A DNA stretch of 64,000 bases. Source: Heterodontus francisci. Lineage: Eukaryota. The DNA lies in the NCBI RefSeq assembly GCF_036365525.1, contig NC_090387.1, positions 88,577,691 to 88,641,690 of the forward strand. Direction: 5' to 3'. A model generated the notes under the pieces. It was given only the letters and a program-made list of their open reading frames with translations. It did no database searches and had not been told where the DNA came from. The translations under genes were made by a program, and so were the position numbers. Shown in pieces: positions 3,906 through 51,680 of the stretch; within the stretch, counting starts at the first letter, position 1, and each line of letters begins with the position of its first letter.

Positions 3906-4439
3906 CTGTCCTTTAGTTACTCGGGTCTGGTTGATGTCAGATTTAATCATCGGGCAATAAGTATATAACGTGTTGACTTTGAGCAGTGAAGAAAGAATGG
4001 TTGACAATAAGGAGCTGTACTTGCATATCCAACCCGACCGTTGTGACTGGAGATCACCCTCGTGTAATTTAATGCACAAGAATCAATGTAACGACTTTAA
4101 GCACGCCATTGCATGCTTAGTACAAAGGAACAAACAAAGTTGTGTCACCTGTTTAATAGTATAAATTCTTGTTTGCAATATTATGGCATTTTAATGTGTA
4201 TAGTTTTAAATAAACAATATATCTGACTTTTTTAAAATTGGTGCGAGCTTGTAAAGGCTTCAACCATTATTCTATATTTCAATCATTATAGAAAAGTTAT
4301 GCTTTTGACGGAACACTGACAATATAAGACTGAATCCAGAAATGCTTTAAGGAGATTCATTTGAGTACAATGTCTGGAATATTCGGTCGAATTTTGAAAC
4401 AAAGTAAACGGCACAAATAAAATGGTCTTACCCGATCCT

Positions 4440-7215
4440 GGGATCCTGATGTTGTGGCCATTTCGGAGACATGGGTAGAGCAGGGGCAGGAATGGATGTT
4501 GCAGGTTCCGGGATTTAGATGTTTCAGAAAGAACAGAGAAGAGGGTAAAAGAGGGGGGGGGGGGGGTGTGGCATTGTTAATCAAGGAAAGTATTACAGCG
4601 GCAGAAAGGACGTTTGAGGACTCGTCTACTGAGGTAGTATGGGCCGAGGTTAGAAACAGGAGAGGAGAGGTCACCCTGTTGGGAGTTTTCTATAGACCTC
4701 CGAATAGTTCCAGAGATGTAGAGGAAAGGATAGCGAAGATGATTCTCGACAGGAGCGAGAGTAACAGGGTAGTGGTTATGGGGGACTTTAACTTTCCAAA
4801 TATTGACTGGAAATACTATAGTTCGAGTACTTTAGATGGGTCTGTTTTTGTCCAGTGTGTGCAGGAGGGTTTTCTGACACAGTATGTGGACAGGCCAACC
4901 AGGGGCGATGCCACATTGGATTTGGTACTGGGTAATGAACCCGGCCAGGTGTTCGATTTAGATGTAGGTGAGCACTTTGGCGATAGTGATCACAATTCGG
5001 TTAGGTTTACCTTAGCGATGGGCAGGGACAGGTATATACCACAGGGCAAGAATTATAGCTGGGGGAAAGGAAATTATGACGCGATTAGGCAAGATTTAGG
5101 ATGTGTAGGATGGGGAAGGAAACTGCAGGGGATGGGCACAAACGAAATGTGGAGCTTATTCAAGGAGCAGCTAATGCGTGTCCTTGATAAGTATGTACCT
5201 GTCAGGCAGGGAGGAAGTTGTCGAGCAAGGGAGCCGTGGTTTACTCAAGAAGTTGAAGCGCTTGTCAAGAGGAAGAGGGCGGCTTATGTTAGGATGAGAC
5301 GTGAAGGCTCAGTTAGGGCGCTTGAGAGTTACAAGCTAGCCAGGAAGGATCTAAAGGGAGGGCTAAGAAGAGCAAGGAGAGGACACGAGAAGTCATTGGC
5401 GGATAGGATCAAAGAAAACCCTAAGGCTTTCTATAGGTATATCAGGAATAAACGAATGATAAGAGTTAGAACAGGGCCAATCAAGGATAGTAGTGGGAAG
5501 TTGTGTGCGGAATCAGAGGAGATAGGGGAAGCGTTAAATGAATATTTTTCGTCAGTATTTACAGTAGAGAAAGAAAATGTTGCCGAGGAGATTACTGAGA
5601 TACAGCCTACTAGGCTAGATGGGATTGAGATTCACAAGGAGGAGGTGTTAGCAATTTTGGAAAGAGTGAAAATAGATAAGTCCCCTGGGCCAGATGGGAT
5701 TTATCCTAGGATTCTCTGGGAAGCCAGGGAGGAGATTGCAGAGCCGTTGTTGTTGATCTTCAAGTCGTCATTGTCGACAGGAGTAGTGCCGGAGGACTGG
5801 AGGATAGCAAATGTTGTCCCCTTGTTCAAGAAGGGGAGTAGAGACAGCCCTGGTAATTATAGACCTGTGAGCCTTACTTCGGTTGTGGGTAAAATGTTGG
5901 AAAAGGTTATAAGAGACAGGATTTATAATCATCTTGAAAAGAATAAGTTCATTTGCGATAGTCAGCACGGTTTTGTGAAAGGTAGGTCGTGCCTCACAAA
6001 CCTTATTGAGTTTTTCGAGAAGGTGACCAAACAGGTGGATGAGGGTAAAGCCATGGATGTGGTGTATATGGATTTCAGTAAGGCGTTTGATAAGGTTCCC
6101 CACGGTAGGCTATTGCAGAAAATACGCAAGTATGGGGTTGAAGGTGATTTAGAGCTTTGGATCAGAAATTGGCTAGCTGAAAGAAGACAGAGGGTGGTGG
6201 TTGATGGCAAATGTTCATCCTGGAGTTTAGTTACTAGTGGTGTACCGCAAGGTTCTGTTTTGGGGCCATTGCTGTTTGTCATTTTTATAAACGACCTGGA
6301 TGAGGGTGTAGAAGGGTGGGTGAGTAAATTTGCGGATGACACGAAGGTCGGTGGAGTTGTGGATAGTGTCGAAGGGTGTTGTAGGGTACAGAGGGACATA
6401 GATAGGCTGCAGAGCTGGGCTGAGAGATGGCAAATGGAGTTTAATGCGGAGAAGTGTGAGGTGATTCACTTTGGAAGGAGTAACAGCAATGCAGAGTACT
6501 GGGCTAATGGGAAGATTCTTGGTAGTGTAGATGAGCAGAGAGATCTTGGTATCCAGGTACATAAATCCCTGAAAGTTGCTACCCAGGTTAATAGGGCTGT
6601 TAAGAAGGCATATGGTGTGTTAGCCTTTATTAGTAGGGGGATCGAGTTTCAGAGCCACGGGGTCATGATGCAGCTGTACAAAACTCTGGTGAGGCCGCAC
6701 CTGGAGTATTGCGTGCAGTTCTGGTCACCGCATTATAGGAAGGATGTCGAAGCTTTGGAAAGGGTGCAGAGGAGATTTACTAGGATGTTGCCTGGTATGG
6801 AAGGAAGGTCTTACGAGGAAAGGCTGAGGGACTTGGGGTTGTTTTCGTTAGAGAGAAGGAGGAGGAGAGGTGACTTAATAGAGACATACAAGATAATCAG
6901 AGGGTTAGATAGGGTGGATAGTGAGAGTCTTTTTCCTCGGATGAGGATGGCAAACACGAGGGGACATAGCTTTAAGTTGAGGGGTGAAAGATATAGGACA
7001 GATGTCAGAGGTAGTTTCTTTACGCAGAGAGTAGTAGGGGCGTGGAACGCCCTGCCTGCAACAGTAGTAGACTCGCCAACTTTAAGGGCATTTAAGTGGT
7101 CATTGGATAGACATATGGATGTAAATGGAATAGTGTAGGTCAGATGATCGGCGCAACATCGAGGGCCGAAGGGCCTGTACTGCGCTGTAATATTCTAATG
7201 TAATATTCTTCTAAT
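4440..7215 (+). mobile_element. Young 5'-truncated CR1-clade LINE with 6-bp TSD (GATCCT)
   Basis: Uninterrupted ORF2, short 3' UTR, TAATATTC-type tandem tail at about 7188-7215. GATCCT at 4434-4439 and 7216-7221. Confidence 0.96.
4454..7138 (+). CDS. CR1 ORF2: N-terminally truncated APE endonuclease plus reverse transcriptase (894 codons)
   Basis: ISETW, GDFN, LDLVL and SDHN endonuclease motifs. NYRPVSLTS, DFSKAFDKV, GVPQGSVLGP and SKFADDTK RT motifs. Confidence 0.95.
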   Translation: MAISETWVEQGQEWMLQVPGFRCFRKNREEGKRGGGGGVALLIKESITAAERTFEDSSTEVVWAEVRNRRGEVTLLGVFYRPPNSSRDVEERIAKMILDRSESNRVVVMGDFNFPNIDWKYYSSSTLDGSVFVQCVQEGFLTQYVDRPTRGDATLDLVLGNEPGQVFDLDVGEHFGDSDHNSVRFTLAMGRDRYIPQGKNYSWGKGNYDAIRQDLGCVGWGRKLQGMGTNEMWSLFKEQLMRVLDKYVPVRQGGSCRAREPWFTQEVEALVKRKRAAYVRMRREGSVRALESYKLARKDLKGGLRRARRGHEKSLADRIKENPKAFYRYIRNKRMIRVRTGPIKDSSGKLCAESEEIGEALNEYFSSVFTVEKENVAEEITEIQPTRLDGIEIHKEEVLAILERVKIDKSPGPDGIYPRILWEAREEIAEPLLLIFKSSLSTGVVPEDWRIANVVPLFKKGSRDSPGNYRPVSLTSVVGKMLEKVIRDRIYNHLEKNKFICDSQHGFVKGRSCLTNLIEFFEKVTKQVDEGKAMDVVYMDFSKAFDKVPHGRLLQKIRKYGVEGDLELWIRNWLAERRQRVVVDGKCSSWSLVTSGVPQGSVLGPLLFVIFINDLDEGVEGWVSKFADDTKVGGVVDSVEGCCRVQRDIDRLQSWAERWQMEFNAEKCEVIHFGRSNSNAEYWANGKILGSVDEQRDLGIQVHKSLKVATQVNRAVKKAYGVLAFISRGIEFQSHGVMMQLYKTLVRPHLEYCVQFWSPHYRKDVEALERVQRRFTRMLPGMEGRSYEERLRDLGLFSLERRRRRGDLIETYKIIRGLDRVDSESLFPRMRMANTRGHSFKLRGERYRTDVRGSFFTQRVVGAWNALPATVVDSPTLRAFKWSLDRHMDVNGIV

Positions 7216-7257
7216 GATCCTCCTGCTTAGCAGCATTTACTGATGTTCCCTTCCCAC
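7211..7257 (-). CDS. Gene A exon 5: cytoplasmic exon interrupted by CR1 insertion (GGKGTSVNAAKQEDH*)
   Basis: Strong acceptor TTTTATTTCTCATCAG. Frame runs into the antisense LINE tail and stops at TAG 7213-7211. The last 2 exon nt and the GTAAG donor lie at 4433-4427 on the far side of the LINE. Confidence 0.75.
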
Positions 7258-7784
7258 CTGATGAGAAATAAAATTAAATGAATCACCAAGAACTGCGTTA
7301 TATTTCCATTCAGCACAAACGCCAAGGAAAATAAATGCAAATCTGTTATATGCCAGCTATAATAGGATCATTGTTTTCACAATGTTACTCAAACTGTTAA
7401 AATAGGGCGCAATGATTGTATTATATTTCTTATGATGAAGCTGTGTGAACATCATTGCATGCATGAAATTCACTAATAGAGGGTTAGAACTGCAGCAATA
7501 CAGTTTAGCAAATTATAACGGACAATCTGCTAAGTTGCCGTTTTGATCAATAATTTAGAGTTGAAGCAATATGTATGCTAAACAGTATTTTCTCATCAAT
7601 CTGTTAGTTAAATTGTCCCATTCAGCATTTCGCCTCCCAAATGTTAACTGTAATTATTTTAGTTTATACTTGCATGTAAATTGTTTGCTTCAGGATCAAT
7701 ATTTCCATTAATTTCAAATTTAAATAATGTGTTATAATATGCTGTTAGAAGCTAACCTATTAGGAAAGTGTGGATGGTTCATAC

Positions 7785-7898
7785 CTTTGGATATAATAAA
7801 TAGAATCCCCTTCACAATCAAAATGGCTAATAGGAGAACTACAAGTGCACCACGGGCACATCCAGCTATGATAACACCATCAACTTTAGAGGCACAAT
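7785..7898 (-). CDS. Gene A exon 4: connecting peptide and transmembrane segment (DCASKVDGVIIAGCARGALVVLLLAILIVKGILFIISK)
   Basis: TCTCATAG acceptor, AAAG|GTATG donor, phase 1/1. Hydrophobic stretch that aligns with the gene B TM exon. Confidence 0.85.
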
Positions 7899-8785
7899 CT
7901 ATGAGATTGACATAAAATCAAAATTAGAAATAGGAATGTAAAACGGATATGCAAAGATCTAAATGCTATATACAATATATTATATTTACAGTACATAAAG
8001 CCTCAATAGATCCATTTCATTATCTCTCAATTTAGCTGATGTGTTTTCAGTCTGACACTAAGTTTGAGACACTGTAATCCGGAGAAATGGCAGCAATGAG
8101 AAATCAATATGATCAATTCCTTACCGAATAGTACTCGAATATGTATCTAGAATAAGTGTTCTACTACTTGAAACATTCGGAAAATAATAAATACGTTGTG
8201 TGTTTCATCGGATTAGCCTGTTGCTCAAACTCCGAAAAATGTTATAATGGGGCGTATTTACACATTCATTTGAAATTCTCTTCGCAGCAATGTTTCACTC
8301 AGGCCGTTTTCCATCTTTAAACATGTGCCACCAAATTAACTATCATTCCATGTTTGGTATAGCGTCGAGGGAGTTGCATACTGAAGAGCGGGGACTGAAC
8401 TTGGACTACTTGATGGCTGCAGGTGTGTGCAAAGCTTCACTTACTCTACTCCAACCTTCCAGTCCATATGAACCTTTCTGGTGTATTGAATGATCACTCA
8501 CCGTGCCCTCCCTTTGTTAATTGAAATGTTCAGGAGTTAATCTGAATTATGGGAAGTATTTTGAGCTAATGTCATCTATTGGCTAAGCTGCTTGTGTCCA
8601 ACCTACTTCTCATCCGATCCAAATAACCAAAAGAAATGGAAACTACACCCAAACAACCGGACCAGAGTTCGGCGTCGACAAAATAAAATGCAAACTCCTG
8701 CAGTAATCACCTCCCACAGATTCTTGTATATACCCATTTGTACGATGATCTCGCGATTAAATTACCTCATCTCATATAATGTTAC

Positions 8786-12745: not shown

Positions 12746-12749
12746 TGTA

Positions 12750-14545
12750 TTCAATGCCTTCACAGTTTACAAAATCTTCTCACAACTGCTTGTGCTTATT
12801 TAAAACAAACTAAAAATCCTCTTGTTTTATGGAATTATGGTAAGCAGGAAAAGAGTGAAGAGTTTTTGAACACTCAGAAGAAACTGCTTATTCTCATTTA
12901 CTCTATGATATTGAGGAATTTCAAAGTGGACTAGGAGTTTCCAAAATCTCGAATTTGCAGGACTAGACTAACACATTTCTCTATGAAATGTACTTCGCCA
13001 TTTTTGAAGAGAAAGCCAAATGAAACCTTGAAGGAAATTTAAAAAGCTTATCTCTGATCAAAGGCAATAGTTGATGATTTGTTCCACTGTCTGTGAAGGA
13101 CAAAGCAAAGCATTCATTGGCATGGGCCTGCCGAAGCAGGGAAAAGCTTTGTTTACAACATTCACATACATTGAGCTAAAGGAGTTGCCGTTTTGCCATA
13201 CGCTTCGACTGGTACAACCTCTATTCTTCTCATTGGAGGTTGAACAGCATATTCACTTCTTTAAAAAATTCCATTCGCAATTCATGAGTTTTTGACATGT
13301 TAATTGAAAATAAATGAAGTGAAGCAGAACCTATTAGTCAGCGTTTCTTATATGGGATGAAGCTCTATTGATGCCAAGATATTTTTCCTGGCGGTAGATT
13401 GTTTACCTCAAAGTTTAATAAGTAATGATCCTAGATTTGGAGGGAACATCGTTCTGCGAGGAGGTGATTTTCGACAGCTCCTACCTGTTATTTCTAGCGT
13501 ATCGAGAGGACAAATTATAGGAATTTGATTCTGATCATGGTGGAAGCAACACAATGTCAATTCAGTCCCATCATTCCACAGGTCACAGTATGTTTCTCTA
13601 ACATTTCACAGTGGCGCAGTGGTTAGCACCGAAGCCTCACAGCTCCAGCGACCTGGGTTCAATTGTGGGTACTGCCTGTGTGGAGTTTGCAAGTTCTCCC
13701 TGTGTCTGCGTGGGTTTTCTCCGGGTGCTCCGGTTTCCTCCCACAAGCCAAAAGACATGCAGGTTGATAGGTAAATTGGCCATTATAAATTGCCCCTAGT
13801 ATAGGTAGGTGGTAGGGAAATATAGGGACAGGTGGGGATGTGGTAGGAATATGGAATTAGTGCAGGTTTAGTATAAATGGTTGATGGTCGGCACAGACTC
13901 GGTGTGCTGAAGGGCCTGTTTCAGTGCTGTATCTCTAAACTAAACTAAACAAAAGCAATATATGGCCACAATTGTGGAAATTCAAAACTGAAAAATAAAT
14001 GTGAGAGTAACACCCAAACAAAAACTGTTTCAGATTGATTGTGTAAATTTAGGATGGAAAATTGTGAAAGGCAATTGAAACATCAGAGAACTGTTCTTTA
14101 TTCCGAGGAGTTAAATTGTTTTAATTTCCTATTTAGTTAAAGGATTTATGTATTTGATAAACTTTATTATTATAATGCTATTCTCTATGGTATAAAAGGA
14201 AATTTAGTTAGATGTGAGTACAAAGATTTTGGGAAAGTGCCATGTGGATTAAAAGTATACATTCGTGTTAACTCTATCGACAAAGAGGATGACAACTGTG
14301 TGTACCCCCAGAGTTTCTGCACAGTCTAATGGGCATACCAGTACAAAAGACCTGGACTCAAGGAAGGAGCACTTATAATGTTGCTACATAATTTGAATCC
14401 CAAGCAGACTTTCTCAAGGGACAGGTTTGAGAGTTTGGAAGCTGTTTCCTTCGCTGGTAGATTCTAAAATTGAAACAGCCAGAATTTAAGACAATAACAT
14501 TTTTATTCTTTGGATAATATTATTGAGGCTTTCAGTGGTAAAAAT
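12750..14545 (+). mobile_element. Helitron Rep/Hel fossil, PIF1-like helicase part 1 (frameshifted, SINE-interrupted)
   Basis: GPAEAGKSFVY (Walker A, about 13123), LIWDEA (about 13347), FGGNIVLRGGDFRQLLPVI (about 13436), LKEGALIMLLHNLNP (about 14357). Confidence 0.85.
13607..13950 (+). mobile_element. tRNA-derived V-SINE (HE1-like)
   Basis: A box TGGCGCAGTGG, B-box-like GGGTTCAATT, central GTGTGGAGTTTGC...GGTTTCCTCCCAC domain, CR1-like tail, (CTAAA)n end. Confidence 0.88.
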
Positions 14546-14549
14546 TGCT

Positions 14550-17295
14550 TTCCATTTCAGGGGAAAACTGTGACTCCAGGCACAGAGAAATGTGGTTGGC
14601 TGATAAACTGCCCTCTGTAATGGCCTAGCAAGCCACTGAGTTATATCATACCACAACAGGAAAGTCGAATAATAATAAAACTAGCTGAGTCATCCTAGAT
14701 GAATCTAGGGATAAGAGTCCATAAAGACACAGCTGCCTAGTCGACACTTCCAAGTCCTCCTCAATGGCATCTAGGGACTTGTACCAAAAATTTCGAGAGC
14801 TCTCCACAGGCAACTCAGATGACAGCCTGACATAGTCATACTCAACGAATTACTATCGTGCGTATGTTCTATCGCACCAGCAGGATAGATCCAGCAGAGG
14901 TCGTGGCAGATTGGCATATGGTTTGGGGAAATTGGCCCTGCGACCTCTTAGCATTAAATCCGGCTCCCATGTAGTCTGATGGTACAGGTTAAATATGGAC
15001 AAGAAAAACTGCTGCTGATTAGCAACTACTAGCCTCCCTCAGCTGATGCATCAGTGCTCATTCATGTTCAACCCCACTTAGAACAAATACTGAGATTAGC
15101 AAGGGCACAAATTGTATTTTGAGTGGAGGACATAAAATTCCATCATCAATAGTGGCTCTGTAGCACCACTACCAATCACACAGGCTGAATTCAGAAAGAT
15201 ATATCTACCAGACAGGGCCTGTGGGAGGGCGTGTGTGAACCAACACGTGGGGAAAACCCACTTGTACTCTCCCTCACCAATCTACCACGTGCAACTGCAT
15301 CTGCCCATGCCAGAATTTGTAGAAGAGACCACCACACACTCCTTTTTCAGACATAGTCCTGCGTTCACAATAAAGAACGTCAGCATTTGGTTGTGTGGCA
15401 CTACTGTCGTGCAAAATGGAGCAGACTTAGAATAGATATAGCAGCTAAAAGCTGGATATCCAGGAGACACTGTGGGTCATCATCAACAGCAGAATTGAAT
15501 TCACTCATAATCTGTAACCTCATGGGCCAGCACTCTACCATTACCATTAAGTTAGGAGGTGAACCCTGGTTCAATGAGAAGTGTACAAGAGAATGTCTAT
15601 AGTAGCAACTGGCATACCTAAAAATGAGGTATCAACCTGGTGAAGCTGCAACACAGGACTACATGCATGCTAAACAGAAGAAGCAGCATGTGATAGACAG
15701 AAATAAGTGGCCCTACAATCAATAGATCAGCTCAAAGCCCTGTCACATCTAAACTTATTTGATGGTGAAAAATTAAACAACGAGCAGCAAGAGGAGAACG
15801 CTCCACAAAAATCTTCATCTTCGATGATAGAGTAGTCCAGCACATAAGTGCAAAGGGCCAGGCTGAAGCATTTGCAACCATTTTCACCTGGAGCTGCCGT
15901 GTGGATGATCCATATCGGATCTTTCCTGAGATCTAAACCATCATTGTTGCCAGTCTTCAGGCAACTCTATTCACACCAGGTAATAATAAGAAGTAGTTGA
16001 AGGCACTGGATAAAGCAAAGGTTGTCGTGCCGGATAGCATGCCGGCTGTAGTACTGAAGACTTGTGCTGCAGAAGCAGCTCGACGTGAGCTAAATCGTTT
16101 CACTATAGCTATAACACAAGCATCTGCCCGAAAATATAGAAATTGCATAGGTATATCCTGCCCACAAAAAGCAGGAAAAATCTAATCAAAGCAGATACCG
16201 CCCTCTCAGTCTACTCTTAACCATCAGCAACGTAAAGGAAAGTGTCATCAACAGTGCAATCAAGCGACATTTACTCAGAAACAAACTACTCACTGATGCT
16301 ATGTTTGGATTCTGCCAGGGGCACCGTGGTCAAGACTTTATTACAAACTTCGTCCCAACATGGAAAAAGAGCTGCATTCCAGAGGCGAGGTGAAAGTGAC
16401 TGCCTCTGAGATCAAACGCAGTTAATTCCAGGAATGGCATCAAACAGCTCTAGCAAATTTTGAGTCAATGCAAATCAGGGAGAAAACGGTCCACTGCTTG
16501 GAGTCAAACCAAGCACTCAGGAATATGTCTATGGTTGTTGGAGGCGAGTCATTTCATACCAGGACATTATAGTAGCAGTCTATGCCTGTATGCAGCAAGC
16601 CCTGAATGACATTCAGAGTTGGTATGATAAATGACAAGTAACACTCACACCGCACCAGTGGCGACCAATGACCATCCCTTGCAAGCGAGAATCGAATAAT
16701 CTCCCCATGACATTCAACAGCATTCCATCGGGGAGGTTTCCAGCATCACCATCCTGGGGGTTAGCGTTGATCAGAAACGTAACTGGACCAGATATATAAA
16801 TACTGCAGCCAAATGAGCAGGGCAGACGTTCGCGATGCTGTGGCGAGTTATTCACCTCTTGACTCCCCAAAGCCGGTCCACCATCTACAAGACTCAAGTC
16901 AGGAATGTGATGTAATACTTAGCACTTACATGAATGAGTGCACTCAAGAAGCTCAGCATCATCAAGGCAAAGCAGCCCACTTAATCGGCACCCCATCTAC
17001 CACCAGCATTGCACAGTGACAGCAGTGTGTTCCACCTACAAGTTGCAGTTCAGTAACTCACCAAGCCTACTTCAATAGTACCTTGCAAGACGGCAACCTC
17101 TCTCAGCTATATGAGCAAGCCTCGCAGACGGATAAGAACAAAACCAAATAACACACCATCCTGACCTGCAACTATATAGTAGATTTACCTACACAGAATT
17201 GAGTGCAGAGGTTCAAGAAGGTGGCTTACTACAATCTTCTCAAGGGCAATTGGTTATGAATAATAAATGCTGGTCTTGCCAGTGACGCTCACCTC
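14550..17295 (+). mobile_element. Old non-LTR retrotransposon, second family (CR1/L2 superclade), heavily decayed
   Basis: Fragments EPWFNEKC, KALDKAK..PD.MPAVVLKTCA, R.LSLL and W..TL.P..W. Related copies at 20880-22190, 52580-58150 and 61920-62835. Confidence 0.75.
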
Positions 17296-25359: not shown

Positions 25360-25443
25360 GAAGAAGAAGAAGAAGAAGAAGAAGAAAAAGAAGAAGAAGA
25401 AGAAGAAGAAGAAGAAGAAGAAGAAAAGAAGAAGAAGAAGAAG
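25360..25443 (+). repeat. (GAA)n microsatellite abutting a SINE 5' end
   Basis: About 84 bp of imperfect GAA repeats, directly visible. Confidence 0.95.
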
Positions 25444-25772
25444 GGTAGCACAGTGGCGCAGTGGTTTGCACTGCAGCCTCACAGCTCCAGCGACCCGGGT
25501 TCGATTCTGGATACTGCCTGTGTGGAGTTTGCAAGTTCTCCCTGTGACTGCGTGGGTTTTCGCTGGGTGCTCTGGTTTCCTCCCACAGCCAAAGATTTGC
25601 AGGTTGATTGGTAAATTGGCCATTATAAATTGCCCCTAGTATAGGTAGGTGGTAGGGGATGTGAGAGGGTAATGGGATTCATGTAGGATTAGTATAACTG
25701 GGTGGTTGATGGTCGGCACAGACTCAGTGGGCCGAAGGGCCTGTTTCAGTGCTGTATATCGAAATAAATAAA
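25444..25772 (+). mobile_element. V-SINE (HE1-like)
   Basis: Near-identical to 13607-13950. A and B boxes, (TAAA)n tail. Confidence 0.88.
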
Positions 25773-39224: not shown

Positions 39225-39279
39225 ATGTTGGCGAGTGTAGTATTTCATTGCCTCGCTGTTCTGGTTGGCATTCTCACAG
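39225..39279 (+). CDS. Gene B exon 1: leader peptide (MLASVVFHCLAVLVGILT-)
   Basis: ATG at 39225, 18 hydrophobic codons plus G, CAG|GTACC donor, phase 1. Confidence 0.85.
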
Positions 39280-39451: not shown

Positions 39452-39772
39452 GCTTCGGCGAAACTTCAGTCAAAGTGACTCAGCTCCCTGAGAGCACAAG
39501 CAGAAACACGGGTACAAACGTTTCCTTTCATTGCACGCTCCCCTTCTCTCAAGATGGTCCACGTGTAAACATATACTGGTGGAAGGAGGGTGCTAATCAA
39601 TATCTAAGCGCGGAACAAGATGACAGAAAAGTAATCGGCTTCAAGACTAAATTCAGCGGCTTCCATCAGATTAGTAATGTGAGTGTCGAGGACGCAGGCA
39701 TATATTATTGCACTGTCGCCCATCGAGACAAAATCGTTGGAAACGGCACAGGTTCCAACTTAGTTGTCTGGG
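39452..39772 (+). CDS. Gene B exon 2: V-set Ig domain with germline-joined J-like motif (GNGTGSNLVV)
   Basis: Polypyrimidine TTTTCCTATAG acceptor and G|GTAAG donor. Protein has VTQLP, VSFHC, IYWWKEG, ISNVSVEDAGIYYC and VGNGT. Confidence 0.95.
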
Positions 39773-40809: not shown

Positions 40810-41121
40810 TTCCGCCAACTCCACTGAGAATTAAGTCTCAGCAAGATCAAAATGATTCATTTGCATCTCTAGTTGTTTTGTGCGTAACATCTCCATTTTA
40901 CCCGAAGAATATCAGCTTTACTTGGTATAAGGATGGCAGAAAAATTGCATCAAGGATAAATAACATTATTGAACTCAAGACCGATGGATTATATGAAGCT
41001 TCTAGCCGGTTGCAAGAGGCGCAGAGTGTCCGGACTGGAACTGTTTATACTTGCTCAGTCTCTCACAGTACCCTCCATATTTCAGCCACGGCCACTCACA
41101 TTGTCACCTATACAAACACAG
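40810..41121 (+). CDS. Gene B exon 3: C1-set Ig domain
   Basis: VPPTPLRI...VVLCVTSPFYPKNISFTWYKDG...TDGLYEASSRL...YTCSVSHSTL. TAG acceptor, CAG|GTAAG donor, phase 1/1. Confidence 0.95.
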
Positions 41122-43148: not shown

Positions 43149-43259
43149 GTGGTGAGCTCACCCGCTGCCAACTGATTTCTGCAGCTAGATGGGGCGGGTT
43201 GGTATTACTGGTGCTGGGTCTCCTCATTGCAAAGCAATGTATCTCAAAGATAAATAAAG
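43149..43259 (+). CDS. Gene B exon 4: connecting peptide and transmembrane segment (GGELTRCQLISAARWGGLVLLVLGLLIAKQCISKINK)
   Basis: TGTTGCAG acceptor, AAAG|GTAGG donor, phase 1/1. Hydrophobic segment homologous to gene A exon 4. Confidence 0.88.
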
Positions 43260-43394: not shown

Positions 43395-43700
43395 TGTTTA
43401 CTTAGAGATACAGCATTGAAACAGGCCCTTCGGCCAACCGAGTCTGTGTTGACCAACAACCACCCATTTATGCTAATCCTACATTGATCCCATATTCCCT
43501 ACCACATCCCCTACCTACACTCGGGGCAATTTACAATGGCCAATTTACCTATCAGCATGCAAGTCCTCGGCTGTGGGAGGAAACCGGAGTACCCAGCGGT
43601 AACCCACGCGGTCACAGGGAGAACTTGCAAACTCCACGCAGGCAGTACCCAGAACTGAACACGGGTCGTTAGAGCTGTGAGACTGCGGTGCTAACCACTG
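43395..43700 (-). mobile_element. V-SINE (HE1-like)
   Basis: Reverse complement of the SINE at 13607-13950. Confidence 0.85.
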
Positions 43701-44356
43701 TTAAGCTTAACTAAGATTTGCAAAGTTAATAATTAACAACGGCCATAGGTTTCATTTTACTAAAGAAAGTTCAATTTCCAAACAGAAAGAGGAAGAACTT
43801 CCTGTTACATGTTGAGACATGGTTGGTTGTTTACAACTGAACGGTTCCAACAATAGTTAGTTAGTTTACCCACAGTAACAGTGCGATTGCTGAAGATAAA
43901 GTTTATTCTGAGTTTTAAGATATACGGGTTCCTTCACATTCACCCCAACCATCTGCATTTACATAGATTGAAACATCTGATTTATTGAATATGGTTTCCA
44001 TCACGACCGGTGTTGGGGTAGATTCAAATTTCTAAAATGGTGTGCTATTTTCCAAGGTCCTTCAGCCACCGGCTGAGATTGGAACGCCAATGAGGCTTTA
44101 TTACGAAATCTATTTTCATTTCCTGAGATTTTACAGCATTAGGGGGAATACACGTAAAATTATGGGAAGTGCCCAAGGGACTTTCCAGTTAGACTCTTGG
44201 TGGCCGACCGGCATCTGAACAATTCCGCTCCTATTTTCAGAAGTTGGTCGGAAACCAAGCAGTCCCTTAAGAGGTGATATCTAGATTATGTTGTAATTTA
44301 CATTGAGCCTACCATAAACTGATCATCGTAAATTCTTGAACTTCATACATTACGAG

Positions 44357-44400
44357 AAGTGCAGAACGATGGCGAAAGATGCGACTATCCTGAGCAGAAG
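44357..44400 (+). CDS. Gene B putative exon 5: 44-nt cytoplasmic exon (EVQNDGERCDYPEQK)
   Basis: Open, phase 1 to 0, AAG|GTATG donor. Same length and phases as the reconstructed gene A exon 5. Acceptor is weak (tandem GAG/AAG). Confidence 0.5.
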
Positions 44401-44999
44401 GTATGATTCCACAATTTATTCCACATTACTTGAATATAGATATAGCCATAAAAGAACTGCAATTTATTTAATACAATCATTATCATGTTTTATTCTATTG
44501 ATGTAAAGGTTAATACAAAATAGGACAGACTGAATTTGGGGTCAGGCAACAGTAAACATTTTTGTCATTGTGTCAGAGACAACTGAATTGTAACTGCCGT
44601 TTTCCAGTTATGATCATACTAATTAAAAGTTACCACACAGCGTACAGTGTTTTGGTGTGTTGTCAATTAGCTAATTCTGGAATAAATACAGAACACACAA
44701 TTTCAAATCCTAACATGCTAGTTTGCTCTTTTTAAAATCAATTTTCAAAATCTATTAGCAGAATATGGTAGTTATGAAAGTGACTATGAAGCTGTCAGAT
44801 TGTCGGAAAATCCATAGTGGTTTGCTAATGCCTCTCGGGGAAGGAAACCTGCCGTCATTAACTGGTCCGTTTTTTCTGTGACTCCAATCCACACTAATGT
44901 GGTTGGCTCATAAAGTCTACGTGGGGTCTCCTCACAGCTCTACCAAAACGTTTCTTGGGCAACCAGAAATAGGACATACTAATTGCTGTTGCCAGCTGT

Positions 45000-45950
45000 A
45001 ACCAACATAACTGCGGTGCATTTGCGATCGATGCCTTGGTTTATGAAGCCCAAGATCCCATATGCTTTCCTAACCACTCTCTCAATATATATTTCCACAT
45101 TCAAAGATCAATGTACATGCACTGGCGGCCCCCTGTTACTGCACAGTCGTTAGAACTGCGCCATTAATTCTACATTTCTTCACCTTTCTGGTAAAATGCA
45201 TCACCTCATATTCGTTTGTATCAAATTCCATCTGTCAGTTGTCTGCATATTCTGGTACCTTATCTATGTCCTGTTGTAAACGGTTCCAATCATCCCGATG
45301 TTTGCCACATTTGGTATCATTGGCACATTTTGAAATTCTATTCCGTAGAATAAGCAGGAATCAATTAGGCAAGGGAATTGTACCTTACTTTCGTTACGTA
45401 GGTATTGCAGTGCAAAACGGCATTGGTGAGGCCAAAACTGCGGTATTGTGTACAGTTTTGGACTCCTTCCCAAAAGAAGGAGAGCGTTGCCATAGAGGGA
45501 GTGCTACAAAATGTCACTATACTGGTTCCTGGAATTAAGAGATGATTCTTATAGGAGTGAGTGAGTAGACGAATGTGAAGTGATCTAATTGAAGCATATA
45601 AACGTATAAAGTTTGTTTTTAAAGGAAGTAAGAAATTTGATCCAAAACAAAAAGATTTCAGTGGCTGGGCAATCTCGAACATGGGGTCACATTCTGAGGA
45701 TAAGGATTCGGTGACTCAGGACTGAGATGAGAATTGTTTTCTAGCAAATGGTTTGAATCATCGGAATTCTCTACCCCAGAGAGCTTAGGATGCTGAAACG
45801 TTGGTTGCATTCAAAGAATATGCCAACGGATTTTCGGGTATTAAGGGAGCTAAAGAGCATTGTTCGAGTGTGGGAATGTGGAGTTGAGGTAACAAATCAG
45901 TCATGATTTTAATGAATGCCAGAGCAGGCTCGAAGGTACCAATGACTTAC
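45000..45950. mobile_element. Two old CR1 fragments in opposite orientation (minus about 45000-45340, plus about 45390-45950)
   Basis: QMEFDT...EVMHF on the minus strand. LVRPKLRYCVQFWTP and 3' UTR on the plus strand. Confidence 0.65.
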
Positions 45951-46128
45951 ATTTTTTCTTTTTTTTTCGTTTTTTTTAATATTCTTCAGTAAGTAGGTTT
46001 TCCAGAATGTTTGCTCGACATTTGGTCTCCACTTATATACTTAATTAAAATTTGTCTCCGTCCATGGGTCGTCAGGGTTTAACTTACAGTCAAAGAAAGA
46101 GAGATGAGCATTTATATAAATAGGAAGG

Positions 46129-46185
<57 letters not shown>
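46129..46185 (+). repeat. (TAGA)n microsatellite, about 14 units
   Basis: Directly visible. Confidence 0.97.
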
Positions 46186-46499
46186 TGTTATCGACGTAGT
46201 TATTGTGACATTATGGATAAATTAAACGCTGGAAGTGGGATCTTATGTAATCTAGGAAGTGACTGTCAAACTTTAATATGATTTCTTGTGCTCCATGTTC
46301 TGATCATTGCAGAATTTTATTTGCTGTTTACTTGCCTGGACAGTGAAAGTGATCTGACTGCTGTGACTCCCAAATACCTTCCTGTCGCCCTGTCCTAAAT
46401 CAAGTCCATCTCGTTACTTACAACACACAGTCTCAAAGTATGTGGAAAAACTCAACGTTGTAAAATAATCCACATGCCTTCACTATATTTTTGCCGCAA

Positions 46500-48500
46500 C
46501 AGAACATACGAATATACGTACGAACATTCGAATTAGGTGCAGCAATAGTCCACTCGGCCCCTCAAGCCTGCTCAGCCATTCAATAAGTTGATGGCTAACC
46601 TGGTTACTCCATATTATCACGCGATAGCCTGTCACCAAATTCCTTATCGATGATCTATCTACTTTCTATTGACATAGCTCTGCAATGTCTCACGAGGTAG
46701 ATAATATGTTTCTTTGTTATTCTTCCTGCCAAAATAGATAACTTCCCATTTTCCCACATTATACTCGATCTGCCATTTGTTTGCCCACTCACTTAACCTA
46801 TCTATATCTCTTTGTAGCCTCCTTATGTCCTCTGCACAACCTGCTTTCCTAAACATCTTTGTGGTATCATCAAATTTAGCAACCAAACCTTCGGTCCCTT
46901 CATCTAAGACATATATAAGCACAGCTGCCTGTGGCACACCACTCGTTACATCTTGCCAACCATAAAATGAACCATCTATGCGTACTGCCTGCTCCCTGTT
47001 AGCTAGCCAATCTTCTACTTCCATCCATTAGTTTTTTTTTAGTTTAGAAATACAGCACTGAAACAGGCCCTTCGGCCCACCGAGTCTGTGCAGATCATCA
47101 ACCACCCATTTATACTAATCCTACACTAATTCCATATTCCTACCACATCCCCACCTGTTCCTATATTTCCCTACCACCTACCTATACTAGGGGCAATTTA
47201 TAATGGCCAATTTATCTATCAACCTGCAAGTCTTTGGCATGTGGGAGGAAACCGGAGCACCCGGAGGAAACCCACGCAGACACAGGGAGAACTTGCAAAC
47301 TCCACACAGGCAGTACCCAGAATTGAACCCGGGTCGCTGGAGCTGTGAGGCTGCGGTGCTAACCACTGTGCCACTGTGTAAGATTAGTGTAAATGGGTGG
47401 TTCAAGGTCGGCACAGACTCGGTGGGCCGAAGGGCCTGTTTCAGTGCTGTATCTCTAAATAAATAAAAAATAAATAAATTAGTTTTATATTTTGCAATGC
47501 AGTTTGATATGGCACCTTATCAAATGCCTTCTGGAAATCTACGTACAATACATCCACCGGTTCCCCTTCATTCACAGCACATGTAACTCCCTCAAAGAAC
47601 TCCAATAATCAGGTTAAACATGATTTCCCTTTCACAAAGCCATGTTGACTCTGGTTGATTACCTTCATTTTTTCTAAGTGCTCTGCTCTCACATTTTCAA
47701 TAATAGCTTCCAACATTTTCCTTCACAAAGATGTTAAGCTAACAGGCCTGCAGTTTATTGGTTTCTGCCTCCCTCTCTTTTTGAATAAAGGAGTTGCATT
47801 CACTATTTTCCAGACAAGTGGAACCTGCCCCGAATGTAAGGAATTCTGAAAAATTAAAACGAACGCATCAACTGTCTGACTAGCCACTTCTTTCAACACC
47901 TTAGGGTGAAGTCCATCAGGACCCGGGGACTTGTCAGCTCGCAACTCCAAGAATTTGTTCAGTATACTTTCCTGGTGATTGTAATTTACTTGAGTTCCTC
48001 CGTCCCTTTCATTTCCTGACTTACAGACAATTCTGGAATGTTACTTGTATCCTTTATAGTGAAGACCGATTCATCTGCCATCTCCATATTAACCATTATT
48101 AATCCCTCAGACTCACTTTCTGAAGGACCAACGTTCACGTTGTTAATTGTTTTCTTTTTTTTAATATCTATAGAAACTCTTACGATCTGTCTTTATATTT
48201 CTAGCTAGCTTTCTCTCGTACTAAAATGTTACCTGCCTCATCGATCTTTTAGCCAATCTTTGCTGTTCTTTTTTAAATTCTGTCCAATCTTCTGACCTGC
48301 CCCATTTTTGCGTAATTTTATGTTATTTTCTTTAAATTTGATACTATCTTTAACTGTTTTAGTTAACCACGGATGGTGGATCCCACCCCCTACCGCCCCA
48401 CCCCCCCCCCCGCAACCACCACCAACCACCCCCCACCCCCTTCCCACCCTTGAAGCTTTACTTTCTCGTTGAAATACATCCACTCTCTGTAGTCTGCGGT
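46500..48500 (-). mobile_element. Degenerate CR1 LINE with nested SINE
   Basis: DKSPGPDGLHPKVLKEVA, RPVSLTS and VTSGVPQ...VAKFDDTTK motifs. Confidence 0.86.
47030..47480 (-). mobile_element. V-SINE (47040-47376, minus) plus inverted second tail (about 47375-47478, plus)
   Basis: Full SINE on the minus strand followed at once by a plus-strand copy of its last 85 or so nt. Confidence 0.87.
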
Positions 48501-49204
48501 GTAACTTCAGTTATATAAATATTACCAGCAGCATATTTCTTTGAACATACAAGTTCTATCAAGTTCTATCAATGGACAACAGTGAAGAACTTTGATTTTT
48601 TATTTTCTTTATTCTCTTGACCTATAAATTTCATGGATTTTCCGGAAATTCTGTGAGATATCCGTGGAACACTCACAGAACCAACTTAAATAGCATTTGC
48701 AGCCTATTGCAGTGTTTCTACAGGATTTATGGTTGTCACCCAGCGAAGTGAAATCGGGAGACCGGTTGTAGCTCTATGGAATTTGCAGATTGTTTACAGT
48801 CTTTCACGCTTGGGCGTTAAGCAATGATTGAGCGGAGCAGAAAAACTGAACATTTAGATCGCTCCACCCGAGAAAGTATCATTGCATTCACTTTACTGTT
48901 TGGAAAATGGGTCGATTTTTTCAATCCCGTTCAACGCTGATGATTAATTTTCAGGCCCGAAAGACTATAACCTTCCCTCAAACTGCCCTGAATGTTTTTG
49001 TTAATAAGACTGATTCAGCCTCCTGAGCGCTGATGGCGCAGAGATAATGCGCAGACAGTGATGTTCTGGCCTGCAGTGACTGATATTTCAATCATTTCTT
49101 TAATGATTTGACTCTGGTTTTCTGGCCAAGTCTCATCCTTATGCACAGAAAGCACCGAACCACGGTATCTGCTCTAACAAAATTTACATATTTGTGTCTT
49201 GCAG

Positions 49205-49311
49205 TCAATCAGAGAGCAGCCGATGTGACGGCACCTTATGCTGCACCAGATACGACCAATTTCTGGAAAGCTCCAAGACCAAAGCCTCAAGAAAAGATCG
49301 TGTATGCCAAG
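49205..49311 (+). CDS. Gene B cytoplasmic exon (VNQRAADVTAPYAAPDTTNFWKAPRPKPQEKIVYAK)
   Basis: TTTGTGTCTTGCAG acceptor, with an alternative in-frame CAG acceptor giving a start at 49213, and AAG|GTAGG donor. Contains two Tyr motifs. Confidence 0.72.
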
Positions 49312-49523
49312 GTAGGTTGGAGATACATGCCTAACGGAAAATGAATAATTTCAATTCACACGTTATGCAGTTTAGTATATGAAACGTCCTAAATGCTAAA
49401 ATAGTAATCTGTTGCATTTAACGCTAATTCTGCGAGGCTCTATCTATTCCAATAACTACTTAACAGTGGACTACAGTCAGATAAAACATGCAACTAATGA
49501 TATTCGCAAAATTGATTTCACAG

Positions 49524-49652
49524 ACCAACCAAAGGTCACCGGGTAATAAACTGACCCAAGCTGCTCTTGATATGACAGGCTTAAAGGGAACAGCAACGCC
49601 TAATTGTAACGACACCAGCACGGAGTTTGCTCAGGTTCGGATGGAAAAGTAA
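49524..49652 (+). CDS. Gene B terminal exon (TNQRSPGNKLTQAALDMTGLKGTATPNCNDTSTEFAQVRMEK*)
   Basis: TTTCACAG acceptor, phase 0, open to TAA 49650-49652. Resembles the ITIM/ITSM-bearing end of SIRP-type tails. Confidence 0.75.
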   Translation, partial: TNQRSPGNKLTQAALDMTGLKGTATPNCNDTSTEFAQVRMEK

Positions 49653-49739
49653 AGAACAGACGTTCTTAATACGCAACGAAATGCCATGTAATATTGCTGT
49701 CCAAAGCGGTGTAGATTTTTCGTGCAAATATGTACTACA

Positions 49740-50097
49740 GGCCCATTAACCCAACATCAATAATTTTGGCAGACAATGTTAATACAGCAAAATCCCACAA
49801 TAGTTAAAATGTCTGATTTGGTAGCCGTTTCAGTGATATTGGTTTAGTGGTAAATATTAGCCAAGGCACCATGTGAATTTCGCTGCTATTCCGCAAATAG
49901 TGTCATGGGATAATTTACCTTGAGAGTCCCGGTGGAATTGGAATAAATGTCTCATCCGAAAGACTGTACATCTGACAATGCAACATTCCACGGTGTTACA
50001 TTGGCATGTTAGCCTAGATTATGAGGTCAAATCTTTGAATGGTCATTGAATTATGAACCTTATGACTCGAAGAGAACAATGTTACTACTGAGCCAAA
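49740..50097 (-). mobile_element. Old Deu-SINE (SacSINE1-like) downstream of the gene B stop codon
   Basis: Minus strand begins TGGCTCAGTAGTAAC (A box) and includes ATAATCTAGGCTAAC and GTCTTTCGGATGAGAC, as recalled for the SacSINE1 consensus. Confidence 0.6.
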
Positions 50098-50244
50098 CGG
50101 GGCACTGGTGAAGAAGATCAAGCACTAGCACATAAGACGAACGTGGTTAGTTTAGAAACACGCTGTGATCTATGAAACCTTAAGTAGTACAAATATCGAA
50201 AATGCAGAATTGAAAATTAATTCAGGAAATAGTACAAGAATGTT

Positions 50245-51680
50245 ATAACAAAAGCAAAATAATGCAGATGATGGAAATCTGAAATAAAAACAAAAAGTGC
50301 TGGAACTGCTCAGCATGTCTAGCAGCATCTGTGGAGAGCGAAGCAAAGTTAACGTTTCAGGTCAGTGACCTTACATCACGACCGGCTAAGGTTAGAAATG
50401 TAGTAAGTTTTAAGCAAATAAAGAAGGGATGGGGCAAAAGAGAACAAAAGGGCAGGTGTTTACAGGGCAGAGGGTTACAGACACTAACTGACAAGGAGGT
50501 CATGGGACAAAGGCAAAGAGTGTGTCAATGGTAAAGTGAAAGACAAAGCGTTAGTTCAGAGAGGGTGTTAAATGACAGAATAATGGACAGCTCTCGACAA
50601 AAGCACAAACATGATAAAAAACAGTGGGCTGGCATATGGTTAAAAAAAATGAGTGGTTAAACAAACTGAAATAAAATAAAAGTAAAAAAAGGTCTGAAAT
50701 TAATGAACTCAGTGTTCTGTCTGGTTGGCTGTAGCGTGCCCAAACGGTAAATGAGATGTTGTTGCTGGAGCTTGCATTCATATTCACTGGAACACTGCAG
50801 CACGCCCAGGACAGAGATGTGGGCATGAGAGCAGGTTCGAGGAGGTGTTGAAATGGCAAGCGACAGGAGCTCAGGGTCATGTTTCTGGACTGAGTGGAGG
50901 CAAGCCACATAGCGGTCACCCAATCTGCGTTTGGTTTCCCCAATGTAGAGGTGGACCACATTGTGAGCAGCGAATACAGTATACTAAATTAAAAGAAGTA
51001 CAAGTAAATCGCTGCTTCACCTGGAACAGGTGTTTGGGGCCTTGGATAGTGAGGAGAGAGGAGATAAAAGGGCCAGTGTTACACTTCCTGTGATTGTATG
51101 ACAAGGTGCCATGGGAAGGAGACGTGATGTCGGGGGTAATGGAGGAGTGGACCATGGTGTTGCGGAGGGAACAGTCCCTTCAGAATGCTGACAGGGGAGG
51201 GGAGGGGAAGGATCTGGTGGCGGGATCACGATGGATGTAGCCAAAACGGCAGAAGATGATCCTTTGGAATTGGAAGCTGGTGGGGATGAATGTGAGGACA
51301 AGGGGAACCCTGTCGTGGTTCTGGGAGGGAGGGGAAGGGGTGAGCGCAGAGGTACGGGAACGGACATGTTTGAGGGGGCGGGGTGGGGGAATCCCCCGCT
51401 TGAGGAAAAAGGAAAACGTAACAGAAGTGCACTTGTGGAAGGTAGCATCATCAGAGCAGATTTGTGGGATGTGGAGAAACTGGTTGAATGGAATGGAGTC
51501 CTTACAAGAGGCAGGGTGTGAAGACGTGTAGTTCAGGTAGCCGTGGGAGCTGGTGGCCTTACAATGAATATTAGTAAACAATCTAATCCTAGAGATGGAG
51601 TCAGAGAAGTCAAGGAAGGGAAGTGTCAGAGATGGACCATGCAAAGGTAAGAGAAGGGTGGAAATTTGAAGCTAAGTTGG
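50245..51680 (-). mobile_element. Penelope-like element (RT C-terminus, GIY-YIG, 3' region)
   Basis: LPFLD...YLNYTSSHPASCKDSIPF.QFL, and FTCTSFNLVYCIRCSQC/LYIGETKRRLGDR. Confidence 0.9.

What the first reader, a model, noticed from the sequence alone, without database searches (positions are those of the whole stretch)
49205..49652. Gene B tail looks like a SIRP-alpha four-tyrosine tail with every inhibitory motif broken
Seen: four motif positions over two exons, APYAAP, IVYAK|T, LTQAALDM and TEFAQV-RMEK*. Known: SIRP-alpha has ITYADL, TEYASI, LTYADLDM and SEYASV near its C-terminus. Here motifs 3 and 4 lack the Tyr (CAA at 49557-59; TTT at 49626-28, one change from TAT), and motifs 1 and 2 lack the +3 hydrophobic residue, yet the frame stays open and the TM carries an Arg. 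Inference: an inhibitory receptor converted towards an activating or decoy form, as is known for KIR and Ly49 evolution.
Basis: partly seen in the sequence, partly recalled or inferred. Interest (0 to 1): 0.78.

Follow-up and report, generated by a model that had tools for sequence, protein, structure and literature searches.

The report
Shark SIRP-like receptor copy lacking inhibitory tyrosines
A horn-shark immune receptor gene has almost the same outer part as a sister gene that carries "switch-off" tyrosine motifs, but has lost those tyrosines and gained a membrane arginine, as activating or decoy partners of paired receptors do, though nothing yet shows that it is expressed.

Summary
The window is horn shark (Heterodontus francisci). 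Gene B belongs to a large shark, ray and chimaera V-C1-TM family that NCBI names SIRP-alpha-like.

The paralogue P0188 is 223 of 227 residues identical in leader, V and C1. It carries LTYAALDM and TEYAQV and has Ala where gene B has the membrane Arg. Tyr stands at these two columns in 29 of 29 and 28 of 29 aligned family units.

Three corrections:
- Motif 2 (VYAQT-type) is the family norm, not a break.
- Motif 1 (YAAPDTTN) is shared with a Mustelus protein.
After it, the 107-nt exon A is out of frame. Gene B also stops 13 codons earlier than P0188.

Neighbouring gene A shows the same change against its paralogue P0098.

My best reading is the ITIM-less, Arg-bearing partner of a paired receptor (0.55). 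The main rival is a decaying pseudogene (0.3): RNA-like contigs showed only the paralogue's transcript.

The scan already noted similar pairs elsewhere in this genome.

The parts
39225..39279 (+). Gene B leader exon (MLASVVFHCLAVLVGILT + 1 nt), donor GT at 39280-81
   Evidence: tblastn of P0188/P0162 gives 19/19 identity; sequence read.
39452..39772 (+). Gene B V-set (VJ-type) exon, phase 1/1
   Evidence: Pfam V-set E=1.2e-10. 103 of 106 residues identical to P0188. The 3 differences are residues seen in 26, 19 and 17 of 180 aligned family V domains.
40810..41121 (+). Gene B C1-set exon, phase 1/1
   Evidence: Pfam C1-set E=9e-13. 102 of 103 residues identical to P0188. Best solved match is UrIg2, 9dmx.
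43149..43259 (+). Gene B transmembrane exon; Arg codon AGA at 43187-89; donor GT at 43260-61
   Evidence: ISAARWGG against P0188 ISSAAWGG. 30 of 36 residues identical. None of the 21 aligned family TM segments has Arg at this column.
44357..44400 (+).
   Evidence: tblastn of P0188 residues 266-281; splice sites read; 14 of 14 residues identical.
49205..49311 (+). Tail exon A (motifs APYAAP and IVYAK), 107 nt; a second AG lies at 49211-12
   Evidence: Exon A is 36 codons in paralogue isoform P0191. In phase 0 from 49205 it reads SIREQPM*.
49524..49652 (+). Tail exon B: LTQAALDM (CAA 49557-59), TEFAQV (TTT 49626-28), stop TAA 49650-52
   Evidence: A contig of run X1 (the paralogue's mRNA) starts matching at 49522 and reads TAC, TAC and CCA at these three codons.
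49653..49688 (+). Relic of the former C-terminus after the new stop (RTDVLNTQRNAM against P0188 RADVLYKQQNAM); a third Tyr is replaced by Asn
   Evidence: tblastn alignment; counted.
7783..7899 (-). Gene A transmembrane exon with Arg (AGCARGALVV), the parallel case in the same block
   Evidence: P0089 matches 100%. Paralogue P0098 has AGCAGGALVV and a 96-residue tail with LTYLAL and LVYAAV.
4427..7257 (+). CR1-type LINE (894-aa ORF at 4454-7138) that cuts gene A's cytoplasmic exon
Evidence: ORF. The last exon of P0089 maps to 7279-7214 and ends inside this element.

Best explanation
Gene B is the non-inhibitory partner of a paired-receptor couple in the chondrichthyan SIRP-like V-C1 family.

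Shown:
- It has intact leader, V, C1 and TM exons with canonical splice sites.
- Its outer part is 98% identical to that of paralogue P0188.
- P0188's tail carries an ITIM (LTYAAL) followed 23 residues later by an ITSM-like TEYAQV. This is the layout and spacing of the SIRP-alpha ITYADL...TEYASI unit.
- In gene B both tyrosines, and a third one further on, are replaced.
- A stop comes 13 codons early.
- An Arg sits 6 residues into the 20-residue membrane helix.

Inferred:
- The product reaches the surface and binds the same ligand as P0188.
- It cannot recruit SHP-type phosphatases.
- Through the Arg it either pairs with an acidic-TM ITAM adaptor (activating) or signals nothing (decoy).
- The near-identity of the outer part against about 14% nucleotide divergence in exon B and the 3'UTR points to gene conversion of the ectodomain, as is known for other paired receptors.
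For: Paralogue comparison: differences are 4 of 227 in leader+V+C1 against 13 of 78 in TM+exon B, Fisher p=8e-6.

Tyr conservation: 29/29 and 28/29 at the two columns.

Targeting of Tyr: all 3 Tyr of the paralogue's exon-B region are among the 12 of 55 changed positions, hypergeometric p=0.008. For the coding part alone it is 2 Tyr among 7 of 42, p=0.024.

TM Arg: absent at that column in all 21 aligned TM segments.

Family-wide link between an embedded basic residue and no ITIM: p=0.0003 with the looser rule.

Gene A in the same block shows Gly to Arg in the TM plus a tail cut by a LINE, against ITIM-bearing P0098.

The ectodomain substitutions are all residues common in the family.

Every splice model gives a tail without an ITIM/ITSM consensus.

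SIRP-alpha's ectodomain (2wng) ranks 4th of 10,889 PDB matches to the family profile.

Literature, passages seen: SIRP-alpha motifs in PMC5413580 and PMC5589908; shark SHP-1/2 SH2 conservation and the ITIM/ITSM consensus in PMC12151841; cd247 expressed in bamboo shark in PMC11372145.
Against: No gene-B-type contig was seen in runs X1-X3. At 49557 the whole depth (57.6) belongs to the paralogue's contig. Contigs show presence and not absence, and the runs are only guessed to be RNA.

No protein among the 206 fetched matches gene B's exons at 100%, and the 90% cluster of P0162/P0188 has only those two members. Public annotation may therefore treat gene B as a pseudogene.

Exon A carries a 1-nt length defect.

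In 49552-49652, silent and replacement differences are both frequent: 5 silent-only codons and 7 replacement codons in 101 nt. That fits relaxed constraint as well as selection.

The Tyr test is post hoc, and with about 29 family units a p of 0.01-0.02 is weak.

A stricter TM rule gave p=0.067.

A 2014 screen found no FcR gamma chain in sharks (PMC4016189, passage), so the adaptor is unknown.
Confidence: 0.55

Rival explanations
1. Gene B is an unexpressed or decaying duplicate (pseudogene). Loss of the tyrosines, the early stop, the 1-nt defect in exon A and the TM Arg are neutral damage, and the intact outer part merely reflects recent gene conversion from P0188.
For: No gene-B-type transcript appears in X1-X3 while the paralogue's mRNA is there at depth 57.6. 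No matching protein is in the collections searched. Exon A is 107 nt where the paralogue has 108. Exon B's divergence (15 of 101 nt) is about that of the 3'UTR (80 differences in 580 nt over both).
Against: There is no stop, frameshift or splice-site loss in the leader, V, C1, TM, small exon or exon B. All four ectodomain changes are family-typical residues. The changes hit all three Tyr (p=0.008). A basic residue in the TM arose in both genes of the block, and gene A is annotated as coding (P0089).
Confidence: 0.3
2. Gene B still signals through tyrosines: exon A (APYAAP, IVYAKT) or the small exon (DYPEQ) is used as a non-ITIM docking site, making it a modified and not a silenced receptor.
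For: The RTVYAQT-type motif is conserved across the family without being an ITIM. Exon A is in frame if the TM exon joins it directly or if the AG at 49211-12 is used. A contig of depth 21.4 covers exon A-like sequence in X1.
Against: That contig differs at 49247 (Leu codon in place of Pro), so it may come from the paralogue. Both annotated paralogue isoforms skip exon A. With the canonical acceptor after the small exon the frame gives SIREQPM*.
Confidence: 0.08
3. Gene B and P0188 are haplotype or assembly versions of one locus and not two genes.
For: The ectodomains are 98% identical. The DNA of the P0188 locus could not be fetched.
Against: P0089 (a 100% match to gene A in the window) and its paralogue P0098, whose accession number is adjacent to P0188's, are both in the same RefSeq set on a record of the same length. 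Exon B plus 3'UTR differ at 80 positions with 5 gaps in 580 nt.
Confidence: 0.03

Closest known systems
Mammalian SIRP-alpha / SIRP-beta paired receptors
   Same: An N-terminal V(J)-type domain is followed by a C1-set domain. The inhibitory member has paired tyrosine motifs: family LTYAALDM...TEYAQV against ITYADL...TEYASI and LTYADL, with Tyr-to-Tyr spacing of 23 against 24 residues (counted from the peptide printed in PMC5589908). The partner has a basic TM residue and no ITIM. SIRP-alpha 2wng ranks 4th of 10,889 PDB matches and SIRP-gamma 8th. NCBI names many members SHPS-1-like.
   Different: There is one C1 domain, not two. Gene B has Arg near the outer third of the helix, where SIRP-beta has Lys (the SIRP-beta detail is recalled). 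Gene B keeps a long Tyr-less tail, not a short one. A profile search of 5.8e9 proteins returned only chondrichthyan proteins (36 hits of 8000 candidates scored), so orthology to tetrapod SIRPs is not shown. CD47 binding is unknown.
KIR2DL/KIR2DS, Ly49 and Siglec-5/Siglec-14 type inhibitory-to-activating conversions (recalled knowledge)
   Same: A duplicate of an inhibitory receptor loses its ITIMs, gains a charged TM residue and keeps a near-identical ligand-binding part. In Siglec-5/14 this identity is maintained by gene conversion.
   Different: Different Ig domain types and lineage. Here the tyrosines are substituted one by one with a late stop, where those cases have an early truncation. 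Adaptor pairing is untested.
PD-1 / BTLA ITIM+ITSM tandem
   Same: A (S/I/V/L)xYxx(I/V/L) motif is followed by TxYxx(V/I); TEYAQV resembles PD-1's (T/V)EYATI. SHP-1/2 SH2 domains are conserved in sharks (PMC12151841 passages).
   Different: PD-1 has a single V domain and no C1, and no activating twin.
UrIg2 (shark non-rearranging VJ-C1 gene, PDB 9dmx)
   Same: It is the best solved-structure match of gene B's C1 exon (E=1.3e-19), and it is also a non-rearranging VJ-C1 gene of elasmobranchs (PMC12227049 abstract).
   Different: The solved UrIg2 chain is V-C1-C2-C3. The terms SIRP, ITIM, tyrosine and 'cytoplasmic tail' do not occur in that paper.

Membership tests
SIRP family (SIRP-alpha-like) | N-terminal V-set domain with built-in J-like GxGT motif | tested here: met
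   Pfam V-set E=1.2e-10; VGNGTGSNLVV at the exon end.
SIRP family (SIRP-alpha-like) | Two membrane-proximal C1-set domains (V-C1-C1) | tested here: not met
   Only one C1 exon (40810-41121) lies between the V and TM exons. P0188 and the other family members are also V-C1.
SIRP family (SIRP-alpha-like) | Ectodomain closer to SIRPs than to other surface receptors | tested here: inconclusive
   With the family profile, 2wng ranks 4th and 4i2x 8th of 10,889, but IgA, UrIg2 and an entry named CT3 rank higher. With single exons SIRP is not in the top 60.
SIRP family (SIRP-alpha-like) | Cytoplasmic tail with paired ITIM-type tyrosines that recruit SHP-1/2 | tested here: not met
   Gene B has Q and F at the two Tyr columns. 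The motifs are present in P0188 and in 29/29 and 28/29 family units. SHP binding is not testable with these tools.
SIRP family (SIRP-alpha-like) | Orthology or synteny with tetrapod SIRP genes; CD47 binding | not tested
   The profile search found only chondrichthyan proteins. No eukaryotic genome context tool was open.
Paired receptor, activating/decoy partner | Ligand-binding part nearly identical to an inhibitory partner | tested here: met
   223 of 227 residues identical to P0188 in leader+V+C1.
Paired receptor, activating/decoy partner | Basic residue inside the transmembrane helix | tested here: met
   Arg is 6th of the 20 uncharged residues LISAARWGGLVLLVLGLLIA. The 14 residues after it are too few to span a membrane alone.
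Paired receptor, activating/decoy partner | No ITIM/ITSM in the tail | tested here: met
   None of APYAAP, IVYAKT, LTQAAL or TEFAQV fits (S/I/V/L)xYxx(I/V/L) or TxYxx(V/I). The other splice models end in DQPKVTG* or SIREQPM* (consensus from PMC12151841).
Paired receptor, activating/decoy partner | Association with an ITAM adaptor; activating signal | not testable with these tools
   cd247 is expressed in bamboo shark (PMC11372145). No FcR gamma was found in sharks in 2014 (PMC4016189).
Paired receptor, activating/decoy partner | Expressed, correctly spliced mRNA | tested here: inconclusive
   Only the paralogue's contig was seen over exon B in X1, and nothing in X2 or X3.
Pseudogene | Disabling lesion (stop, frameshift or lost splice site) in an obligatory exon | tested here: inconclusive
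   There is none in the leader, V, C1, TM, small exon or exon B acceptor. There is a 1-nt length defect in the optional exon A and a stop 13 codons early.

The most novel reading that the evidence does not exclude
A whole two-gene inhibitory block (the ancestors of P0098 and P0188) was duplicated in the horn shark lineage. Both copies in this window were then turned into Arg-bearing, ITIM-less receptors by different routes. Gene A took a Gly-to-Arg change plus a LINE insertion that cuts the tail. Gene B took an Ala-to-Arg change, one-by-one replacement of three tyrosines and a new stop, while its outer part was kept in step with the inhibitory twin by gene conversion. This would be pathogen-driven paired-receptor evolution caught in progress in the oldest jawed-vertebrate lineage. 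It would also place the SIRP-type double-tyrosine tail at the base of jawed vertebrates.
Probability: 0.3. Interest if true: 0.6.

Novelty: new member of a known kind. Interest (0 to 1): 0.45.

Why it matters
Paired inhibitory and activating receptors are thought to arise when pathogens exploit an inhibitory receptor and the host answers with a look-alike that does not inhibit. Most worked examples are mammalian.

Here a shark family shows the same logic, with the intermediate steps still readable: the tail exons remain, the tyrosines are swapped out one at a time, the stop is late, and a second gene in the same block has made the same move by another route.

My searches found no paper describing this family (the library holds open-access papers only). 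It offers matched natural pairs (gene B with P0188, gene A with P0098) for testing two things: whether SHP recruitment by ITIM+ITSM tails, and adaptor pairing through a membrane arginine, already worked in cartilaginous fish.

Tried and rejected
- PDB search with the V exon alone: the top hits were designed 'Pizza' propellers matching 38 residues repeatedly. I set these aside as spurious repeat summation.
- Literature: 'signal regulatory protein' + 'cartilaginous fish' + ITIM gave 0 papers. SIRP/shark/ITIM/'paired receptors' gave no paper on sharks among the 15 listed of 77. The UrIg papers do not mention SIRP or ITIM.
- Family profile search for bony-vertebrate SIRPs: only chondrichthyan proteins came back. 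The third allowed protein search (tail region only) was not spent, because shared 5-residue words with tetrapod tails looked unlikely.
- A direct statistical alignment of the shark tail with a tetrapod SIRP-alpha tail was not run. I held only motif strings and one peptide printed in papers, so the comparison is by motif and spacing only.
- I suspected that the Leu-to-His change in the V domain was a sign of decay. I rejected this: His occurs in 17 of 180 aligned family V domains. One search used wrong column mapping and is void.
- A strict rule for 'embedded basic residue' found only 5 of 68 gene groups, p=0.067. A looser, still mechanical rule gave 15 of 77, p=0.0003. Both are reported.
- Sequencing runs: only three small runs of one sample were offered, none on record as RNA. 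I take them as RNA-like for two reasons. First, non-repeat intron bins have zero depth. Second, the 656-nt contig stops matching at the exon B acceptor with 73 letters lying elsewhere. The joints I wanted (44400 to 49524, 49311 to 49524) were not among the 15 joints shown of 85, so exon use in gene B stays open.
- dN/dS across the whole gene and mapping of a gene-conversion tract were not possible without the paralogue's DNA.
- Supplementary files were not opened. The SHP alignments of PMC12151841 are in its supplement and I saw only the text that describes them.

Full report
**What is there.** The window is vertebrate DNA with shark-type repeats. Gene A on the minus strand matches the Heterodontus francisci protein P0089 (XP_067905013.1) at about 100% per exon, so the window is horn shark.

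Gene B lies on the plus strand. I read its exons from the sequence and from alignments of related proteins:
- leader, 39225-39279
- V-set exon, 39452-39772
- C1-set exon, 40810-41121
- transmembrane exon, 43149-43259
- a 44-nt cytoplasmic exon, 44357-44400
- exon A, 49205-49311
- exon B, 49524-49652

All have AG/GT borders. Pfam calls V-set and C1-set. I searched the model exon by exon and left the joined step out.

**The family.** phmmer with the V exon against 1.84 billion representatives gave 279 hits at E<=0.001. The close ones are V-C1-TM-tail proteins of sharks, rays and chimaeras. NCBI mostly names them 'tyrosine-protein phosphatase non-receptor type substrate 1-like', that is SIRP-alpha-like, with a scatter of other automatic names.

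Their tails follow the consensus xxYAxLxx ... ERTxYAQTKQ ... KLTYAAL ... TEYA. With the family profile, human SIRP-alpha ectodomain 2wng ranks 4th and SIRP-gamma 8th of 10,889 PDB matches. With the C1 exon alone the best solved match is shark UrIg2.

Papers confirm ITYADL, LTYADL and TEYASI in SIRP-alpha (PMC5413580 passage) and the peptide ITYADL...TEYASI (PMC5589908 passage). Its Tyr-to-Tyr spacing is 24 residues, against 23 in exon B. The family differs from SIRPs in having one C1 domain. A profile search returned chondrichthyan proteins only. I therefore call it SIRP-like and not a proven SIRP orthologue.

**The decisive comparison.** P0188 (XP_067905932.1, same chromosome record) is gene B's closest relative. 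Identity per exon is as follows:

| Part | Identical residues |
|---|---|
| Leader | 18/18 |
| V | 103/106 |
| C1 | 102/103 |
| Small exon | 14/14 |
| TM exon | 30/36 |
| Exon B | 35/42 |

The contrast of 4/227 against 13/78 differences gives Fisher p=8e-6.

P0188 reads ISSAAWGG, LTYAALDM, TEYAQV and runs 13 residues past gene B's stop, with a further Tyr (VLY) where gene B's relic reads VLN. Among the 29 family units that passed inclusion (from 26 proteins; 76 weak domain hits in all among 193 proteins), Tyr stands at the first column in 29 and at the second in 28, with one His. None of 21 aligned TM segments has Arg at gene B's column.

- Motif 2 is not broken. RTVYAQT, without a +3 hydrophobic residue, is the family norm.
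- Motif 1's YAAPDTTN also stands in Mustelus P0169, which keeps both later Tyr.
- The 44-nt exon was missed. It ends in phase 0. Exon A is 36 codons in paralogue isoform P0191 but 107 nt here. After the small exon it therefore reads SIREQPM*, unless the AG at 49211-12 is used.
- Both annotated isoforms of the paralogue skip exon A. X1 joins the small exon to exon B. X2 joins the TM exon to exon B out of frame (DQPQVTG*; gene B would give DQPKVTG*).

Under every model the product lacks an ITIM or ITSM. The consensus is from PMC12151841.

**Reads.** Only three small runs of one sample were offered. Laid on 44300-50299, they cover repeats and exons but not the plain intron bins. One 656-nt contig of X1 (depth 57.6) matches 49522-50101 with 80 differences and 5 gaps. 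Its first 73 letters lie elsewhere, as expected of a spliced mRNA.

The 15 differences listed in 49552-49652 translate exactly into P0188's residues: TAC, TAC, and CCA in place of the stop. So the paralogue is expressed, and its exon B plus 3'UTR differ from gene B by about 14%. At 49557 there was no other depth, so no gene-B transcript was seen. A contig of depth 21.4 covers exon A with a Leu codon at 49246-48.

**Is it decay or a changed function?**

For function:
- There are no lesions in the obligatory exons.
- The four ectodomain changes are family-typical residues.
- All three Tyr are among the changed positions (p=0.008, or 0.024 for the coding part; post hoc).
- In the family an embedded basic residue goes with no ITIM-like motif (12/15 against 17/62, p=0.0003; a stricter rule gave p=0.067).
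- Gene A shows the same pair of changes against P0098: AGCARGALVV against AGCAGGALVV, and a tail cut by a CR1 element where P0098 has LTYLAL and LVYAAV.

For decay:
- No transcript was seen.
- No matching protein is among the 206 fetched, and only two members are in the P0162/P0188 cluster.
- Exon A has the length defect.
- Exon B has diverged about as much as the UTR, with 5 silent-only and 7 replacement codons in 101 nt.

**Mechanism.** P0188-type members most likely recruit SHP-type phosphatases through the ITIM+ITSM pair. Shark SHP SH2 domains are conserved (PMC12151841). This step is inferred.

Gene B cannot do so. Its Arg lies 6 residues into a 20-residue helix, the depth at which family members with short tails carry theirs. 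That fits pairing with a zeta/gamma-type adaptor. cd247 is expressed in bamboo shark (PMC11372145), but no FcR gamma was found in sharks in 2014 (PMC4016189). All of this is inferred.

**Verdict.** This is a new member of a known kind (paired immune receptors) in an unstudied shark family. Earlier notes of this scan describe like pairs elsewhere in this genome. They agree with my reading but are not independent evidence.

Noticed in passing
window 7214-15541 (- strand), with 4427-7257: Gene A (P0089) is a second V-C1 receptor. Its TM has Arg where paralogue P0098 has Gly, and its cytoplasmic exon runs into a CR1-type LINE with an intact 894-aa ORF (4454-7138). It repeats the ITIM-less, Arg-bearing pattern of gene B.
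   Followed up: partly
window 10572-15541 (- strand): The annotated P0089 model starts with three extra upstream exons (15541-15404, 13260-13171, 10802-10572), while paralogue P0098 starts at MVMNG (about 10625). The long N-terminal extension looks like an annotation artefact.
   Followed up: no
window 49205-49311, position 49247: An X1 contig (depth 21.4) over exon A reads T for C at 49247, turning YAAP into YAAL. Some expressed copy, probably the paralogue, has an intact YxxL at motif 1.
   Followed up: partly
window 46659-47950 (- strand) and 46900-47500: Reverse-transcriptase fragments lie in gene B's long intron. Contig depth there reaches over a million in all three runs, which marks a highly abundant repeat.
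   Followed up: no
window 43484-43672 and 47203-47466: There are two copies of a SINE-like element whose translation reads ...GNPR.HRENLQTP.RQYPELN.GR... It is also picked up by the odd C-terminus of Scyliorhinus P0001, at 13679-13747, 25521-25586 and 47241-47306.
   Followed up: no
window 10700-12100; 11267-11435: A G+C-rich stretch (GC 0.52) with a 52-bp tandem repeat lies just upstream of gene A's V exon region. A (GAA)28 run stands at 25360-25443.
   Followed up: no
P0190/P0023, P0002, P0028 (other family members): An older lineage has Arg two residues earlier in the helix (LLISRCAWGG) and short tails. It is shared by horn shark and a stingray, so activating-type members arose more than once in the family.
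   Followed up: partly
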